DNA of 60,502 nt, counting the filler, from Dugesia japonica (lineage: Eukaryota): the NCBI GenBank assembly GCA_001938525.1. It is 6 parts of 6 records of this genome, joined end to end, with 100 filler letters (N's around TTAATTAATTAA, not from the genome) between each part and the next. Parts side by side here need not be neighbours in the genome. Positions count along the whole stretch, not along the records: positions 21,049 to 31,207 come from MQRL01639549.1; 5 more parts are not named here. One strand, 5' to 3'. The notes under the pieces are model-generated. The model saw only the letters and a program-made list of their open reading frames with translations, ran no database searches and was not told where the DNA came from. The translations under genes were made by a program, and so were the position numbers. How positions within the stretch are numbered: the first letter of the stretch is position 1; every line of letters starts with the position of its first letter. Positions 21,049 to 31,207 of the stretch are shown here, in pieces.

Positions 21049-21165
21049 GATTGACTCGAATACCGATTGCTATTGTTCGAATACTGATTGTTGCTATTGC
21101 TCGAATATTGGTTATTATGTGTTATACATGTTATGTTATATATGTTATGCATGCAAACCTCAACA
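21049..21165 (-). mobile_element. Start of an LTR-like repeat (TGTTGAG...), truncated by the scaffold end
   Basis: 21092-21165 is the exact reverse complement of 28474-28547 and 31134-31207. Confidence 0.7.
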
Positions 21166-21963
21166 CATGTACTACTGGAAATGGGAGCTAAGTATAGATA
21201 ACATTGCTGGATAAGACGGTTTGATTGGCCGTTTTCGAGAGTTTTGGATCAATCCTTAATCGAAAAATTGGAATTAAATCATTACTCATTTATCATTTAT
21301 TGGCAATCGACATGGAGTTATAATTTACTAAGAAAACGACAATTGGTAACGGGATTTATCTGAATTGACAAACAGGGAATTGGAAATCAATTATCGGAAA
21401 GGTAATCCATATTTTTATCAGGACTAGTCGGTTCTCCCGATTCAAAACCATCAAATGAAGGTATGCAATTATAGTAATTCATTTTTTGCTAAAAAATAAA
21501 TATTTTAATTCTTATTCTCTTTATTTATGATTTACAAATTAACAATAATTGCATTGGAAATCATTTATGCTTTATTATTGATTACAGAATGCTACTTTAA
21601 TGACATTAACACAGGATTAAAATGAAAATTTACTTGTAATTTGAAAATTAGGTTCCTGCAACGGGGTTTTTTCTCGTTTTTCTTCTAGTCACGGAGGTTT
21701 CACACGGAATGGGTGTTGAACTCTTTTCTATATTTTCATTTTAATTGAAAATAATTATGTCCGATTCAACTACAGTTTACTTTCGATTTTTTCCTTGGAT
21801 CACTCGTGATAAATTTTGCTTCCAAGTAATAAATAGACCAGCCAATTGAATAATTACTGAGTCGTAGAATTTCTCTTTTGATATTTCGAATTTAATGAGT
21901 AAATCTTTAACACTTAAGTTTTATGAAATAAATTGTTGTTTTTCGACTAAAATCAGGGGTGTT

Positions 21964-22005
21964 TTTATACCATTTTTGATTACACCCTGACTTCTTCTGC
22001 ATTGG
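21964..22005 (-). promoter_or_regulatory. Pol II promoter module CCAAT - AGGGTGT - GGTATAAA
   Basis: Same three motifs in the same order with near-identical spacing at 33692-33732. Confidence 0.55.
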
Positions 22006-22879
22006 CTGTCTATTTTTAATTTGAATTTCTTGATTCTAATTGGGTCTAAAATTCTAAAACTTTTTAACATTTTCCACTACACCATTGGTGCCTATTTTTG
22101 GATCACCTTGTAATTTTTCTGTCTTTGTTTCATTTTTTTTCTGGTCTATCATTGGTTCATTCTTTAGACCCTTCTCAAGACTCTTCTGGTGATGGTAGTT
22201 TTCTTGTTAAACAATCCTATTGTTTCTGATCATTTCCTTTTAGGATTTTCTTATTCGAAATCTCCATGATTTTTCTGGATTCAAAAACAGGTTTTTCCTT
22301 AATTTATTTTCTATTTTGCGATAAATAAATTAATTTTCCTTTATAAATTAATTATTTTTTTCCGAATTATTTTCTTATTTTCTTTTTAACAATTATGATT
22401 TTCTTAATTAACGACTTAATTTCAGCCAATATTTTACTCATTTGATGCTTTCTTTCTGCATTTTATTTTTTCACCTGTTTCCGTATTAATGTAATTATTG
22501 CAATTTTCTCATCTTTGATAATTATCTTAATCAATTTCTTTTTCTAACTCCTTTCTTTATTATTTCGCGATTTGGGCCCCCTGGCTTTATCTTCTTTTCA
22601 AACTGGGTGTTTCACCCCAACAAATTGCTATCCGTTTTGTTCAAATTCCGTCCCAGAATCTTTCGTTGTCCCACCACGTTGCAGAATTCTTAAAACCCTA
22701 TAATATTGACAGAGCAAGATGAAATTTAAGGTAATTACATCCTATTTATTTACACATAAAAATTTCACTACTTTATACATCAAGCTACGATATACATCAA
22801 TACATATATAATTTGCTTGTTGATTCAATTGCTACCAATATTCAGTAATTCAGTTACTAATTACAGTTATTTACACTAC

Positions 22880-23965
22880 CTTCGGCTTTCTTCAATCAAT
22901 TTCTTCCTCTGGGTGCTAGTGGGTCTTGGGTTTAGGTACTGACCCATATTTAAGTAGAATTTTGGTGACGATTGACTGTGAGAGATTCTTAATAGCAAAA
23001 TCATTGATCTTAATTGATTCAGACGTGGAAATTTTATGCGGGATCCAGCTTGGAGTTACTGCAGGCTTTGGAGGATCTTGAATTATCAATGGTGCTGGAT
23101 GTCTTGGTCGAGCTGGAGTTACTACTTGCAAATTTGAGGGGTTGGGAAAGGTATTGGTTGCCATGCTGGTGTTGTTGGGTTTAAAACCGATTGCGAAGGA
23201 TTTTGGATAAGTAGACCTCTTGGGTGAGATGGAGCTGGTGTGACACTACAAGTGATGACTGGATGAGAGATGGATTGGCAGATTGCATGAGATTGCTGGA
23301 GTTTTTTGATCATTGCAAATTGTTCGATTAGATGCTGCTGTTTTTTTGCAATGTCGGTTTCTTTTTCTTGGCAGCGGGTGCGTAACTCGATGATTTCTTG
23401 TTCTAGTGCAGCTTTTTATTGCTCATAATATTCGCTTTTATTTTGATATTCCTGTATGATGCATTCAAATTCCAGGGATAATTTATCAATACCGGCTCAA
23501 ACGCCTTCTTGGTTAGCTAGATTGGTTAGGAGCTGATTTTCTGTGGCCAGACGAGTTTTCTCAAACTGGGTATTGAATAATTCTATTTGGAGGATTTGGG
23601 TATTTTCTTGTTCTATTGCCAGTTGCTTTTCAAGCTCCTTTCTTTTGGGTTCAACCGCTTTAAATTTACTTTTCCAGTTACAAGCTTGCTTTATGGCATT
23701 TATTTTCGCTCTATTCTCATCGAGGCGTTTTTGGCTATCTTCTTATGCCTGACGCATGCTCTCTTTTTTATTTCGAGTTCATGCCTAATGTTTTCTATCT
23801 GGGTTTCTAGTCGACTGATGTAATTTTGGAGTTGTAGATTTAGAAGTGCATTCTCTTTAGCTTCTAGTTTCCATTTTAGGGCTTCGGGGACTATTATTAG
23901 TGATTGGTTCTGAATTTGCAGAGTGTGGACTTCATCTCGGAGATAGGTTATTAACTTTTCATTGC
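22880..23965 (-). pseudogene. Long coiled-coil protein with Pro-rich C-terminus, disrupted
   Basis: Manual translation NEKLITYLRDEVHTLQIQNQ...KRKELEKQLAIEQEN...LEQEIIELRTRCQEKE then VTPAPSHP/VTPARPRHP; about 2 stops and 2 frameshifts. Confidence 0.6.
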
Positions 23966-24061
23966 TTATTTCTTAATTAGGGAGAGTTATTAATTAAGTA
24001 TAACATGATAAGTGACTATTATAAATAGATATATACATTAGTTATATATTTTATGTTTCTT

Positions 24062-29150: not shown

Positions 29151-29168
29151 TACAATCTTCTAAAATAA

Positions 29169-29552
29169 CTTCAGCAAATTTTAAAACCATTTACTTGGGA
29201 AAAGTATCCAGGAGAAAGACATTTGTTTAAACATAACTATACTGGACCAGGAACAAGATTAGATTTAAGATTAGATTCCGAAAGTAAACCAAAACCAGGA
29301 GAAGAACCAACTAATAGAGTTGATGAAGCCGCTTTAAAACATGATTTATCTTACAAGTCAGAAGATTTAAGAGATAGACATTTAGCTGATGTTAATTTAA
29401 TTAATGATTTGAATAATATTCCAAATCCAACCACTTCTGAAAAAATACAAAGAAGTTTAGTAAAATTAGCAATGAAAGGTAAAATTATTTTAGGTGCTGG
29501 AACAAACGAAGGGAGTTTCATCCCTTTATTAAAAACAAAGAAAATAATTTAA
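29169..29552 (+). CDS. Parvovirus VP1-type phospholipase A2 domain protein (Polinton/adintovirus PLA2)
   Basis: KYPGERHLFKHNYTGPGT (Ca loop YxGxG), DEAALKHDLSY (HDxxY) and downstream HLAD are all intact. Confidence 0.9.
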   Translation, partial: LQQILKPFTWEKYPGERHLFKHNYTGPGTRLDLRLDSESKPKPGEEPTNRVDEAALKHDLSYKSEDLRDRHLADVNLINDLNNIPNPTTSEKIQRSLVKLAMKGKIILGAGTNEGSFIPLLKTKKII

Positions 29553-30270
29553 AAAATATTAATAATAAAGAAAATAAAGAAATATTATCAAATGAATTAC
29601 ATAAAGAATATAGAAAACCAAAACGTTTTCTAAAAGTAATAATAAAAGAAATTGATGAAACTTGGTCTGCAGATTTAATTTTTTACAATAAGAAAATATT
29701 ACTAATAGTTATCGATTTATATTCTAGATTTGCATTTGTAGAAATATGTAGTAATAAAACCGGTCAAGCAATAACAAATTCATTTGAAAAAAGAATTGAA
29801 CAAAATNNNNNNNNNNNNNNNNNNNNNNNNNNNNNNNNNNNNNNNNNNNNNNNNNNNNNNNNNNNNNNNNNNNNNNNNNNNNNNNNNNNNNNNNNNNNNN
29901 NNNNNNNNNNNNNNNNNNNNNNNNNNNNNNNNNNNNNNNNNNNNNNNNNNNNNNNNNNNNNNNNNNNNNTGGAATAATAATTTATTACAAAAAATTGTAA
30001 ATGATTATAATAATACAATTCATAGTTCTATAAAAACAACTCCCATAGAAGCTAGTGAAAATCCTGAGAAAATAATACAAATAATAAATCAACATAATCA
30101 TGAAAATGATAACTTTAGTTTTAAACAAAAATTTAAAATTGGAGATAGAGTTAGAATCTTTAAATATAAATTTGGAAAAGGTTTTACATCCAAATGGACA
30201 AATGAAATATTTGTAGTAACCCAAGTTTACAAGACGAAACCTTTTACTTATGGAATTACTGATTTAGAAA
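29522..30270 (+). pseudogene. Polinton/Maverick-type DDE integrase, gapped and 3'-truncated
   Basis: NELHKEYRKP...IDETWSADL, IVIDLYSRFAF, YNNTIHSSIKTTP, KFKIGDRVRI, GFTSKWTNEIFVV...PFTY..TDL. Confidence 0.9.
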
Positions 30271-31098
30271 GATATTCCCGATTGTTATGATCCTGTGAGT
30301 AAATTCCAAGACTCCACCCAGCATGACTCCTTAACAGTGAAACAAATTAATAATGACATTCGAACAGTCAGTTATGGTCATTTTTTGAAAGAACAAAAAC
30401 GTCAGTTAATAAAAATATTAAAGGCTGAGAGAACACATTTTACGTTCCACATTAAAATATTGGATAAGCTTCACTATGAAAGGACATTCACAGAAAAAAC
30501 CATGAATGCTGCTAAATTCAACCTTCTAGTACATCATACTACCCTACAGAATACTGCCTTTGTGTACCAAGCCGCCTCATTCCATCGAACGTTTCTCAAT
30601 GAAGCGCAGATGACACAANTCTTCAATAATCCGCCTGATAGTATTCCTTTCGGCATAAGTGGATATATTACGGCAATAGATTCAATTATAGTTGACCATG
30701 AGAAATTATCAGATTCTCAATACCATTTTCTACCCAACCATACGAAGATCCGGTTATTGTCTATTACGACCAGTACTATATCTATCCGTAAATCACTTGG
30801 TCCATTAAGTTATTTGTATACGCACGCTAAGATTACGAGAATGACAATAGAGAAACGCAATCAGGAATTGCAGAATATTGCAAATGTAAGCAAAGCTAGG
30901 AGGAGTCAACCTGCCAGAAAACTTACTCGTAAATCTAGCACAAAAGCTGTAGATATTTTTTCCCGAAGCCCTTCTGTTTCCCCATCATCTATTAATCTAG
31001 AAACCGACTTCCCGGAATGTATATATAACGAACCGTGTTCCGATAATACTTCTTTGCCATACCATGATATAGCCAGCCCTTATTTTAGTCTTACCTAA
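30271..31098 (+). CDS. 5'-truncated uninterrupted ORF of unknown function before a polypurine tract and LTR start
   Basis: Open frame of about 275 codons beginning at the junction that truncates the integrase; GAAGAGGGAA at 31120-31129, then TGTTGAG repeat at 31134. Confidence 0.55.
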   Translation, partial: DIPDCYDPVSKFQDSTQHDSLTVKQINNDIRTVSYGHFLKEQKRQLIKILKAERTHFTFHIKILDKLHYERTFTEKTMNAAKFNLLVHHTTLQNTAFVYQAASFHRTFLNEAQMTQXFNNPPDSIPFGISGYITAIDSIIVDHEKLSDSQYHFLPNHTKIRLLSITTSTISIRKSLGPLSYLYTHAKITRMTIEKRNQELQNIANVSKARRSQPARKLTRKSSTKAVDIFSRSPSVSPSSINLETDFPECIYNEPCSDNTSLPYHDIASPYFSLT

Positions 31099-31207
31099 AG
31101 ATGACGGTGCATCTTTCTCGAAGAGGGAATGTTTGTTGAGGTTTGCATGCATAACATATATAACATAACATGTATAACACATAATAACCAATATTCGAGC
31201 AATAGCA

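What the first reader, a model, noticed from the sequence alone, without database searches (positions are those of the whole stretch)
21049..31207. Candidate endogenous virus-like element: Polinton/adintovirus core genes back-to-back with an anti-apoptosis and membrane-protein arm
Seen: one scaffold carries, on the plus strand, HTH genes, a capsid-like fragment, PLA2 and a Maverick-type integrase. On the minus strand it carries a hydrophobic glycoprotein-like ORF, a BIR-BIR-RING gene and a coiled-coil gene. These are compact and largely intronless, and the divergent ATGs (26960 and 27180) are only about 220 bp apart. Known: PLA2, integrase, capsid and adenain are Polinton/adintovirus genes; IAPs are host-manipulation genes of large insect DNA viruses, not standard Polinton core genes. 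Inference: this may be a Polinton-like virus lineage that suppresses host apoptosis and possibly carries a membrane protein. Alternative: the left arm is the 3' end of a giant Ty3/gypsy polyprotein next to an unrelated Polinton. As I recall, planarian Burro elements carry TM and BIR domains; this needs checking. No pPolB or packaging ATPase is visible in this copy.
Basis: partly seen in the sequence, partly recalled or inferred. Interest (0 to 1): 0.88.

Follow-up and report, generated by a model that had tools for sequence, protein, structure and literature searches.

The report
Decayed virus-like transposon with IAP cargo
This short, gap-ridden scaffold holds the worn-out remains of a Polinton/adintovirus-like mobile element: broken copies of a cell-death inhibitor, a membrane protein, a phospholipase and an integrase between inverted end repeats; it is an ordinary genomic fossil, and cell-death inhibitors in such elements have already been reported.

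Summary
The piece is three contigs. Gap 1 is not a continuous join. Gap 2 probably lies inside one integrase-like gene, but frame cannot be judged.

**Confirmed**
- Parvovirus-type PLA2 domain (Pfam E=3e-9; relatives up to 72% identical).
- One BIR (C-terminal half only) plus an IAP-type RING (E=7e-14).
- One strong membrane-spanning segment.
- Coiled-coil-like sequence.
- Two paralogous small ORFs.
- The divergent ATGs.

**Weak or unconfirmed**
- Integrase (rve E=0.003, cut by gap 2; type undetermined).
- HTH fold.
- "Capsid-like" fragment.

Every recognisable gene is broken or truncated. No PolB, ATPase, capsid, protease, RT or RNase H was found.

**New evidence**
- A perfect 74-nt inverted repeat closes both ends of the scaffold.
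- GC content shows sharp domains: about 0.37 in the arms, about 0.21 in the core.
- A 135-nt palindrome sits at one GC switch.

The gap-free contig with the IAP arm has no PLA2 or integrase. Linkage rests on 40 shared bases, a shared 600-nt end module and scaffolding.

**Best reading:** a decayed, non-autonomous Polinton/adintovirus-like derivative with a cargo arm. The Burro/Ty3-gypsy alternative is not supported. IAP homologues in adintoviruses and fusogen plus GC-rich cargo in nematode Mavericks are published. Interest is low to moderate.

The parts
21049..21165 (.). Left end. Inverted-repeat arm at 21092-21165, plus 43 nt further out. 24-nt tandem sub-repeats at 21050-21107. The true terminus is cut by the scaffold edge.
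   Evidence: 74/74 complementary to 28474-28547 and 31134-31207.
21166..22918 (-). AT-rich stretch (GC 0.26-0.35) with no open piece above 67 codons. Non-coding or fully decayed.
22919..23972 (-). Remnant of a coiled-coil gene followed by a proline-rich tail. Broken: its open pieces are spread over all three frames, and the first piece has no start codon.
   Evidence: Weak coiled-coil Pfam matches at E 0.001-0.06; composition and frame counts.
24065..25040 (-). IAP-like gene remnant (BIR, degenerate BIR-like stretch, RING). Broken: one frame change, and the N-terminal part, including the first half of the BIR, is missing compared with relatives.
24843..24965 (-). BIR domain match (profile positions 30-69 of 70). 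The CX2CX16HX6C ligands are present.
   Evidence: E=6e-11; NAIP, XIAP, cIAP chains; sequence.
24573..24641 (-). Degenerate second BIR-like stretch with non-canonical ligand spacing.
   Evidence: i-E 0.049 here; 1.5e-5 at the homologous place in P0004; aligned with P0003.
24092..24217 (-). IAP-type RING finger (C3HC4). All eight ligands are present.
   Evidence: zf-C3HC4_3, E=7e-14.
25635..27104 (-). Remnant of a type-I-membrane-glycoprotein-like gene. One frame of 490 codons with 6 in-frame stops. Hydrophobic N-terminus, 4 N-glycosylation sequons, 9 Cys, one strong transmembrane segment. No relatives found.
   Evidence: 6 stops against 42 and 23 in the other frames; no Pfam or PDB match.
25869..25925 (-). 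Predicted transmembrane segment (mean Kyte-Doolittle hydropathy 2.54 over 19 residues).
26872..26891 (+). Isolated internal copy (18/20) of the 20-nt sub-repeat of the terminal inverted repeat.
   Evidence: 0.00 expected by chance; no extended similarity.
26982..27116 (.). 135-nt palindrome (29-bp perfect stem) at the GC switch between the two arms. Each arm carries a TATAAA-like box.
   Evidence: DNA fold -34.1 kcal/mol, z=-8.5.
27180..27512 (+). Small ORF 1 (110 aa), helical, HTH-like but not confirmed.
   Evidence: HTH_Mga E=0.014; pLDDT 77, five helices; no Foldseek match.
27693..27896 (+). Small ORF 2 (67 aa, one N), a paralogue of ORF 1 (130 nt at 79%).
27948..28547 (+). End module, copy 1. 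Holds a 162-aa orphan ORF (27950-28438) and the inverted-repeat arm 28474-28547. It ends at gap 1.
   Evidence: identical to 30608-31207 apart from one N.
28548..28597 (.). Assembly gap 1. Its flanks are not continuous sequence.
28598..28637 (+). Start of contig B. Repeats 27863-27902 (the 3' end of small ORF 2) at 39/40, then diverges.
28635..29105 (+). Two unassigned open pieces (70 and 86 codons). Not confirmed.
   Evidence: no family match above noise.
29169..29549 (+). PLA2-like gene remnant (domain at 29220-29429). Single frame. The YxGPG loop and the His-Asp dyad are kept. The N-terminal 30-40 residues and the start codon seen in relatives are missing.
29483..30290 (+). Integrase-like remnant spanning gap 2 (29807-29969). 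Weak rve match at 29657-29800. No start codon before the gap. The catalytic centre is partly hidden by the gap.
   Evidence: rve E=0.003, 18.1 bits against a 32.6-bit cut-off. Right flank: no family match.
30268..31098 (+). 276-codon orphan ORF (GC about 0.37). Its last 162 codons are those of the end module.
   Evidence: no relatives; AF2 pLDDT 39.5.
30608..31207 (+). End module, copy 2, with the inverted-repeat arm 31134-31207 cut by the scaffold edge.

Best explanation
The scaffold is a collapsed or scaffolded picture of a multi-copy mobile element bounded by inverted repeats. The element descends from a Polinton/Maverick (adintovirus-like) virus of an AT-rich invertebrate and is now non-autonomous and decayed.

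**AT-rich core (GC about 0.21).** It keeps two small helical ORFs, a PLA2 gene of the adintovirus 'PLA2X' type and an rve-type integrase remnant.

**GC-richer flanks (about 0.37).** These read outward towards the ends and look like cargo:
- an IAP-type BIR/RING ubiquitin ligase;
- a type-I membrane glycoprotein-like gene;
- a coiled-coil gene;
- an orphan ORF next to the right end.

**Inferred function in the ancestor.**
- The PLA2 would have breached membranes at entry.
- The integrase would have acted on the inverted ends.
- The IAP would have blocked caspase-dependent death of the infected cell.
- The glycoprotein would have sat in a membrane, as an envelope protein or in a surface role.
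- Both arms would have been transcribed divergently from the palindromic region at 26982-27116.

**In this copy** all the recognisable genes are broken or truncated. Any movement would depend on enzymes supplied by intact relatives.

**Shown:** the domains, the breaks, the inverted ends, the GC domains and the two structural versions. **Inferred:** single-element linkage across gap 1, Polinton ancestry, and all functions.
For: - A perfect 74-nt inverted repeat lies at the left end and in both copies of the right end module. It has sub-terminal tandem repeats.
- The scaffold starts and stops inside these repeats, as expected for a multi-copy element.
- PLA2 PF08398 at E=3e-9 with catalytic residues kept. 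There are 165 relatives, up to 72% identical, several of them multi-copy in Lottia gigantea.
- PLA2X is typical of Alpha adintovirus virion modules, and IAP and Bcl2 homologues are reported in adintoviruses (PMC8502044).
- A weak rve core follows the PLA2.
- Contig B begins with 39/40 bases of small ORF 2 of contig A and shares its extreme AT content. Contig C ends in the same 600-nt module as contig A.
- The difference between the two versions does not coincide with the GC switches, so AT-rich and GC-richer parts were joined before the versions diverged.
- A GC-rich cargo region next to a terminal repeat is described for nematode Mavericks (bioRxiv 10.1101/2022.07.12.499685).
- The IAP unit is colinear with a 483-aa BIR/RING protein up to its C-terminus.
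Against: - No PolB, packaging ATPase, major or minor capsid, or protease appears in any of 39 open pieces scanned.
- The integrase match is below Pfam's threshold, and its family (Maverick, Ginger, Ty3/gypsy) could not be tested.
- No hit carried an adintovirus or Polinton name.
- The only gap-free contig with the IAP arm has no PLA2 or integrase. Gap 1 joins non-continuous sequence.
- Element termini and target-site duplications are not visible.
- The glycoprotein-like gene, the coiled-coil gene and the 276-codon ORF have no relatives, so calling them 'cargo' rests on composition only.
- Some frame changes could be assembly errors in a low-quality AT-rich assembly that also has single Ns.
Confidence: 0.55

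Rival explanations
1. Scaffolding artefact joining two repeat families. Contig A is a self-contained inverted-repeat element carrying IAP-like, glycoprotein-like and coiled-coil genes plus small ORFs, with no Polinton ancestry. Contigs B and C come from a different, Polinton-derived family that merely shares the end module.
For: Gap 1 flanks are not continuous, and contig A runs from inverted repeat to inverted repeat without PLA2 or integrase. There are sharp GC domains. No Polinton hallmark lies in contig A.
Against: Contig B starts with 39/40 bases of contig A's second small ORF and has the same extreme AT content as contig A's small-ORF block. A shared 600-nt end module with identical inverted-repeat arm implies at least a common mobilisation system.
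Confidence: 0.2
2. The minus-strand arm is a fragment of a giant Ty3/gypsy (Burro-like) polyprotein, which in planarians carries BIR, RING, Smc-like and env-like regions. It lies beside an unrelated Polinton remnant.
For: Burro elements do carry BIR, RING (AIR1), Smc, BCL2-like and env-like regions (PMC6431247). The same kinds of domain occur here. The host could be a flatworm (AT-rich; planarians hold Polintons).
Against: - No RT, RNase H, protease or gag in 39 scanned pieces.
- The ends are inverted, not direct.
- In Burro the env region is followed by PR-RT-RH-IN. Here the glycoprotein-like gene is followed by the IAP unit and coiled coil.
- The IAP unit ends with a stop at the same point as a 483-aa stand-alone relative.
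- None of the best 150 relatives exceeds 1406 aa.
Confidence: 0.05
3. A cut-and-paste DNA transposon of the Ginger type. It would have inverted ends and a gypsy-like integrase used as transposase, and would have picked up a PLA2 gene and host genes. It would not be a Polinton derivative. (Ginger features are from my own knowledge, not tested here.)
For: Inverted ends, an rve-like core and absence of PolB and capsid genes.
Against: The PLA2 of this type is a virion-module gene of adintoviruses. The integrase here has no start codon and is truncated, so it cannot be shown to be the element's own transposase.
Confidence: 0.1

Closest known systems
Adintoviruses / Polintons (Mavericks) of animals (Starrett et al. 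2021, PMC8502044)
   Same: Inverted terminal repeats. A parvovirus-type PLA2 gene ('PLA2X' of the Alpha virion module). A retrovirus-like integrase. Accessory homologues of IAP and Bcl2 are reported. Degraded endogenous copies are common.
   Different: No PolB, ATPase, hexon/penton or adenain here. The integrase is weak and untyped. No hit was named as adintovirus. The element is at most about 9-10 kb and all the recognisable genes are broken.
Nematode Mavericks with MFUS-1 fusogen and cargo region (Widen et al., bioRxiv 10.1101/2022.07.12.499685)
   Same: A membrane glycoprotein with a signal-like N-terminus and a single C-terminal transmembrane segment. A GC-richer cargo block next to a terminal inverted repeat.
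   Different: The glycoprotein-like gene here is about 490 codons (MFUS-1 is 866 aa). It has no detectable relative or fold assignment and is interrupted by stops. The cargo here is an IAP-like gene, not WASP proteases or KRMA kinases.
Planarian Burro giant Ty3/gypsy elements (PMC6431247)
   Same: The same kinds of accessory domain: BIR, RING, coiled coil (Smc-like) and an env-like membrane protein.
   Different: Burro has LTRs, gag and PR-RT-RH-IN, with its domains fused in a polyprotein of about 4,900 aa. Here the ends are inverted, no RT, RH or PR is found, and the IAP unit is stand-alone.
Cellular and large-DNA-virus IAPs (BIR + C-terminal RING E3 ligases)
   Same: BIR zinc ligands with canonical spacing. 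An IAP-type C3HC4 RING at the C-terminus. BIR matches to NAIP, XIAP, cIAP and DIAP1 chains and to invertebrate cellular IAPs.
   Different: The first BIR lacks its N-terminal half. The second BIR-like stretch is degenerate. The RING is out of frame. The closest full-architecture relative is only 33% identical.
Parvovirus VP1 unique-region PLA2 (Pfam PF08398)
   Same: The YxGPG calcium loop and the His-Asp catalytic dyad are conserved.
   Different: Here it is a small stand-alone protein family (120-200 aa, often with an N-terminal PF18930 zinc ribbon), not the N-terminus of a capsid protein. No PDB sequence match.

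Membership tests
Polinton / Maverick (incl. adintovirus) | [quoted passage not shown] | tested here: not met
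   No match in 39 open pieces on both strands. The nominal gaps of 50 and 163 N are too short to hide it, though gap lengths are estimates.
Polinton / Maverick (incl. adintovirus) | Retrovirus-like (rve) integrase of the Maverick clade | tested here: inconclusive
   rve E=0.003, 18.1 bits against a cut-off of 32.6, profile positions 6-60, cut by gap 2. Clade not testable: no integrase comparators could be obtained.
Polinton / Maverick (incl. adintovirus) | Terminal inverted repeats | tested here: met
   74/74 nt inverted repeat at both scaffold ends. The outer termini are cut by the scaffold edges.
Polinton / Maverick (incl. adintovirus) | 6-bp target-site duplication | not testable with these tools
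Polinton / Maverick (incl. adintovirus) | Double jelly-roll major capsid, penton, packaging ATPase, adenain-like protease | tested here: not met
   No family match. The 'capsid-like' pieces at 28635-29105 give only noise.
Alpha adintovirus virion module | PLA2X gene (parvovirus-type PLA2 domain) | tested here: met
   PF08398 E=3e-9, catalytic residues conserved in alignment A1. None of the 120 best hits carries an adintovirus name. The gene lacks its N-terminus and start.
Ty3/gypsy Burro-like LTR retroelement | Long terminal direct repeats | tested here: not met
   The left and right ends are inverted relative to each other. The only long direct repeat is the end module present twice through scaffolding.
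Ty3/gypsy Burro-like LTR retroelement | gag, protease, RT, RNase H | tested here: not met
   No match in 39 open pieces.
Ty3/gypsy Burro-like LTR retroelement | Accessory domains embedded in a giant polyprotein | tested here: not met
   The IAP unit is colinear with the 483-aa P0003 to within 6 residues of its C-terminus and is followed by a stop. The best 150 relatives are at most 1406 aa.
Ty3/gypsy Burro-like LTR retroelement | Direct sequence similarity to Burro proteins | not tested
   No Burro sequence was reachable with the tools.
IAP (BIR + RING E3 ligase) | BIR domain with CX2CX16HX6C zinc site and complete fold | tested here: inconclusive
   The zinc site and the C-terminal half are present. 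The N-terminal half was found nowhere in the piece.
IAP (BIR + RING E3 ligase) | C-terminal C3HC4 RING | tested here: met
   zf-C3HC4_3 E=7e-14, but in a different frame from the BIR part (one frame change).
Viral class I/II/III fusion glycoproteins | Recognisable fusion-protein fold or family match | tested here: not met
   No Pfam or PDB sequence match for the pieces. Only generic type-I membrane features. Fold not testable on broken pieces without relatives.

The most novel reading that the evidence does not exclude
The scaffold is a decayed copy of a still undescribed lineage of Maverick/adintovirus-like viruses of an AT-rich invertebrate, possibly a flatworm or another lophotrochozoan. 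In this lineage an IAP-type ubiquitin ligase is paired with its own type-I envelope-like glycoprotein that is unrelated to the gB-like fusogen of nematode Mavericks. That would be a second, independent gain of an envelope gene by this virus class. The palindromic divergent control region and a terminal-repeat motif repeated beside it would hint at self-regulation.
Probability: 0.15. Interest if true: 0.6.

Novelty: new member of a known kind. Interest (0 to 1): 0.28.

Why it matters
If the arms really belong to one element, this adds one more case of Polinton/adintovirus-like elements carrying host-manipulation cargo (an IAP) and a membrane protein. It would come from outside the insects, vertebrates and nematodes where such cargo has been described. 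That bears on how these elements pick up host genes and whether some lineages are enveloped. This particular copy is broken in every recognisable gene and its linkage is unproven. Its value is therefore as a pointer to look for intact relatives in a better assembly, not as a discovery in itself.

Tried and rejected
**Searches that gave nothing**
No other copies, no flanks and no host identity could be obtained.
- Word-indexed protein searches found nothing for the BIR-bearing ORF or the 276-codon ORF.
- PDB sequence searches found nothing for PLA2, either integrase flank or two glycoprotein-like pieces.
- Rfam and tRNA scans found nothing.
- Antisense and other leftover ORFs had no Pfam match.
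- The paper's supplements with the adintovirus IAP maps are not held.

**Structure and sequence tests that were uninformative**
- The AF2 model of the 276-codon ORF had pLDDT 39.5 and was unusable, so no fold search was made.
- The AF2 model of small ORF 1 (pLDDT 77) had no Foldseek PDB match below E=1. 'HTH' stays unconfirmed.
- I looked for an extended internal terminal repeat around 26872-26891. Only the 20-mer matches.
- dN/dS between the two small ORFs was 0.66 over 63 codons, which is uninformative.

**Readings rejected**
- LTR reading of the 600-nt direct repeat, because the left end is inverted.
- AT-rich block as a simple nested insertion, because there are no repeats at its edges and the two versions differ at points that are not the GC switches.

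**Left out on purpose**
- Scans of viral and metagenome contig collections.
- Any consensus of copies.
- Any joined or read-through version of a broken gene.
- Any filling of the N stretches.

Full report
**Physical make-up and the gap test**

The piece 21049-31207 is three contigs:
- contig A, 21049-28547;
- 50 N;
- contig B, 28598-29806;
- 163 N;
- contig C, 29970-31207.

There are single Ns at 27775 and 30619.

The last 600 nt of contig A (27948-28547) are identical to the last 600 nt of contig C (30608-31207), apart from the single N. The first 40 nt of contig B (28598-28637) repeat 27863-27902 of contig A at 39/40 and then diverge.

Gap 1 therefore joins an end module to an internal segment. 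Its two sides are not continuous sequence and share no reading frame.

Gap 2 is entered by an open frame from the left and left by an open frame on the right. Both flanks have the same extreme AT content. The left flank matches positions 6-60 of the 102-position rve profile. This fits one integrase-like gene crossing the gap. The two frames differ at the nominal length, but that length is only an estimate, so frame cannot be judged. I did not look up or fill any N.

**Ends**

A perfect 74-nt inverted repeat links 21092-21165 with 28474-28547 and with 31134-31207. On the right it is cut by the gap or the scaffold edge. On the left, 43 more bases continue outward, with 24-nt tandem sub-repeats.

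The scaffold thus begins and ends inside the same inverted terminal repeat, as expected when an assembler cannot leave a multi-copy element. Termini and target duplications are not visible.

**Two versions**

In contig A the second small ORF is followed almost at once by the end module. In contigs B and C the same 40 bases are followed by about 2 kb before the same end module. That 2 kb holds unassigned ORFs, PLA2, the integrase-like gene and the start of a 276-codon ORF.

Contig A is the only gap-free stretch that holds the IAP arm, and it holds no PLA2 and no integrase.

**Composition**

GC is 0.33-0.42 in three stretches: about 22500 to 27100 of the left arm (its outer 1.5 kb is 0.26-0.31), 27950-28547 and about 30270-31207. 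It is 0.17-0.27, locally up to 0.33, in 27100-27950 and 28598-30270.

AT skew shows coding on the minus strand left of about 27100 and on the plus strand to its right.

The points at which the two versions differ do not coincide with the GC switches. This suggests that the AT-rich and GC-richer parts were already joined before the versions diverged.

**Plus-strand genes**

- **PLA2.** Pfam PF08398 matches at E=3e-9. There are 165 relatives, the best 72% identical, from an unnamed ENA contig. Several 60-66% identical hypothetical proteins of Lottia gigantea lie on different scaffolds.
  - The family is small (120-200 aa), often with an N-terminal PF18930 zinc ribbon.
  - In alignment A1 the glycine loop and the His-Asp dyad are invariant and are kept here.
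  - The window copy is in one frame and covers residues 40-145 of the 146-aa best relative. It has no counterpart of the N-terminus and no start codon.
  - No hit bore an adintovirus or Polinton name. The protein I had in mind is adintovirus PLA2X, and the link rests on the literature.
- **Integrase.** The rve match is E=0.003, 18.1 bits against a cut-off of 32.6. The right flank has no family or PDB match. There is no start codon before the gap. 'Maverick-type' could not be tested.
- **Small ORFs.** These are two paralogues with only weak HTH_Mga matches (E 0.014 and 0.067). AF2 gives five helices (pLDDT 77) with no Foldseek match below E=1.
- **'Capsid-like fragment'.** The pieces at 28635-29105 match nothing.
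- **276-codon ORF** next to the right end. It has no relatives and no usable model.

**Minus-strand genes**

- **IAP-like gene.**
  - BIR matches at E=6e-11, but only profile positions 30-69. There are PDB matches to NAIP, XIAP, cIAP and DIAP1.
  - An IAP-type RING matches at E=7e-14.
  - The exhaustive search gave 945 relatives, none of the best 150 longer than 1406 aa. Those aligned over most of the length are ordinary BIR/RING proteins: P0003 (483 aa), P0097 (403 aa) and the fragment P0004.
  - The window gene is colinear with P0003 from mid-BIR to within six residues of its C-terminus, in two frames. The N-terminal 170 or so residues, including the first half of the BIR, have no counterpart anywhere in the piece.
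  - A second, degenerate BIR-like stretch is weakly seen here (i-E 0.049) and more clearly at the same place in P0004 (1.5e-5).
  - Count: one frame change and one N-terminal truncation.
- **Glycoprotein-like gene.** It is one frame of 490 codons with 6 in-frame stops, against 42 and 23 in the other frames. It has a hydrophobic N-terminus, 4 sequons, 9 cysteines and one strong transmembrane segment. It has no relatives. Whether some of the stops lie in short introns cannot be told.
- **Coiled-coil gene.** The sequence is rich in E/K/Q/L, with weak matches to coiled-coil families. It is spread over all three frames with no start in its first piece.
- Some frame changes could be assembly errors.

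**Junction**

A 135-nt palindrome (26982-27116, 29-bp perfect stem, z=-8.5) sits exactly at the left GC switch. Each arm has a TATAAA-like box.

An in-frame ATG at 27104 lies inside the palindrome.

An isolated 18/20 copy of the terminal sub-repeat lies at 26872-26891.

**Interpretation**

The most economical reading is a decayed, non-autonomous derivative of a Polinton/adintovirus-like element with a GC-richer cargo arm. I give this confidence 0.55.

So are the 40-nt link and the common AT-rich block.

Against it stand the absence of every Polinton hallmark, the weak integrase and the non-continuous gap 1.

Rivals:
- a scaffolding join of two families that share an end module (0.2);
- a Ginger-type transposon (0.1);
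- a Burro fragment (0.05).

The Burro idea was worth checking. Burro does carry BIR, RING, Smc and env-like regions. Here, however, there is no RT, RNase H or protease. The ends are inverted, the order differs, and the IAP unit is stand-alone.

**Known or new**

- Adintovirus homologues of Bcl2 and IAP are reported, and PLA2X is a standard Alpha adintovirus gene (PMC8502044).
- Nematode Mavericks have a fusogen and a GC-rich cargo block beside a terminal repeat.
- Planarians hold Polintons that are targeted by piRNAs, although the host of this piece is not known.
- The generic BIR relatives are cellular IAPs of marine invertebrates.

This is therefore a new, broken member of a known kind.

- I left out scans of viral and metagenome contig collections, because I could not tell whether they would fetch viruses of animals.
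- One slip: one search printed per-frame alignment bounds for the IAP-like gene. I changed later scripts to counts and outer bounds, deleted nothing, and do not repeat those numbers.

Noticed in passing
window 26982-27116: A 135-nt palindrome with a 29-bp perfect stem (DNA fold z=-8.5) lies exactly where GC drops from about 0.37 to about 0.19. Each arm carries a TATAAA-like box pointing across the spacer. It could be a promoter palindrome, a foldback insertion or a recombination scar. This is unresolved.
   Followed up: partly
window 26872-26891: An isolated 18/20 copy of the 20-nt sub-repeat of the terminal inverted repeat lies about 90 nt from the palindrome, in the orientation of the left end. 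0.00 such matches are expected by chance, and there is no extended similarity around it.
   Followed up: partly
window 27563-27653: Short tandem arrays (GTAATC x10, and an 11-mer x3.5) lie between the two small paralogous ORFs.
   Followed up: no
window 29169-29549 and proteins P0152-P0271: The PLA2 belongs to a large family of small proteins (120-200 aa). About half have an N-terminal PF18930 (DUF5679) zinc ribbon. The family is abundant in metagenome contigs and multi-copy in Lottia gigantea. The genomic context of these relatives was not examined.
   Followed up: partly
proteins P0003, P0004, P0097 (relatives of the IAP-like gene): These form a small, unnamed group of BIR / degenerate-BIR / RING proteins of 400-480 aa, known only from UniParc or ENA contigs. 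They share the odd second BIR-like stretch with the window gene. Their hosts, and whether they sit in mobile elements, are unknown.
   Followed up: partly
window 27950-28438 and 30295-31098: The 600-nt end module begins 2 nt before the ATG of a 162-aa orphan ORF. In contig C the same frame stays open for a further 111 codons upstream.
   Followed up: partly
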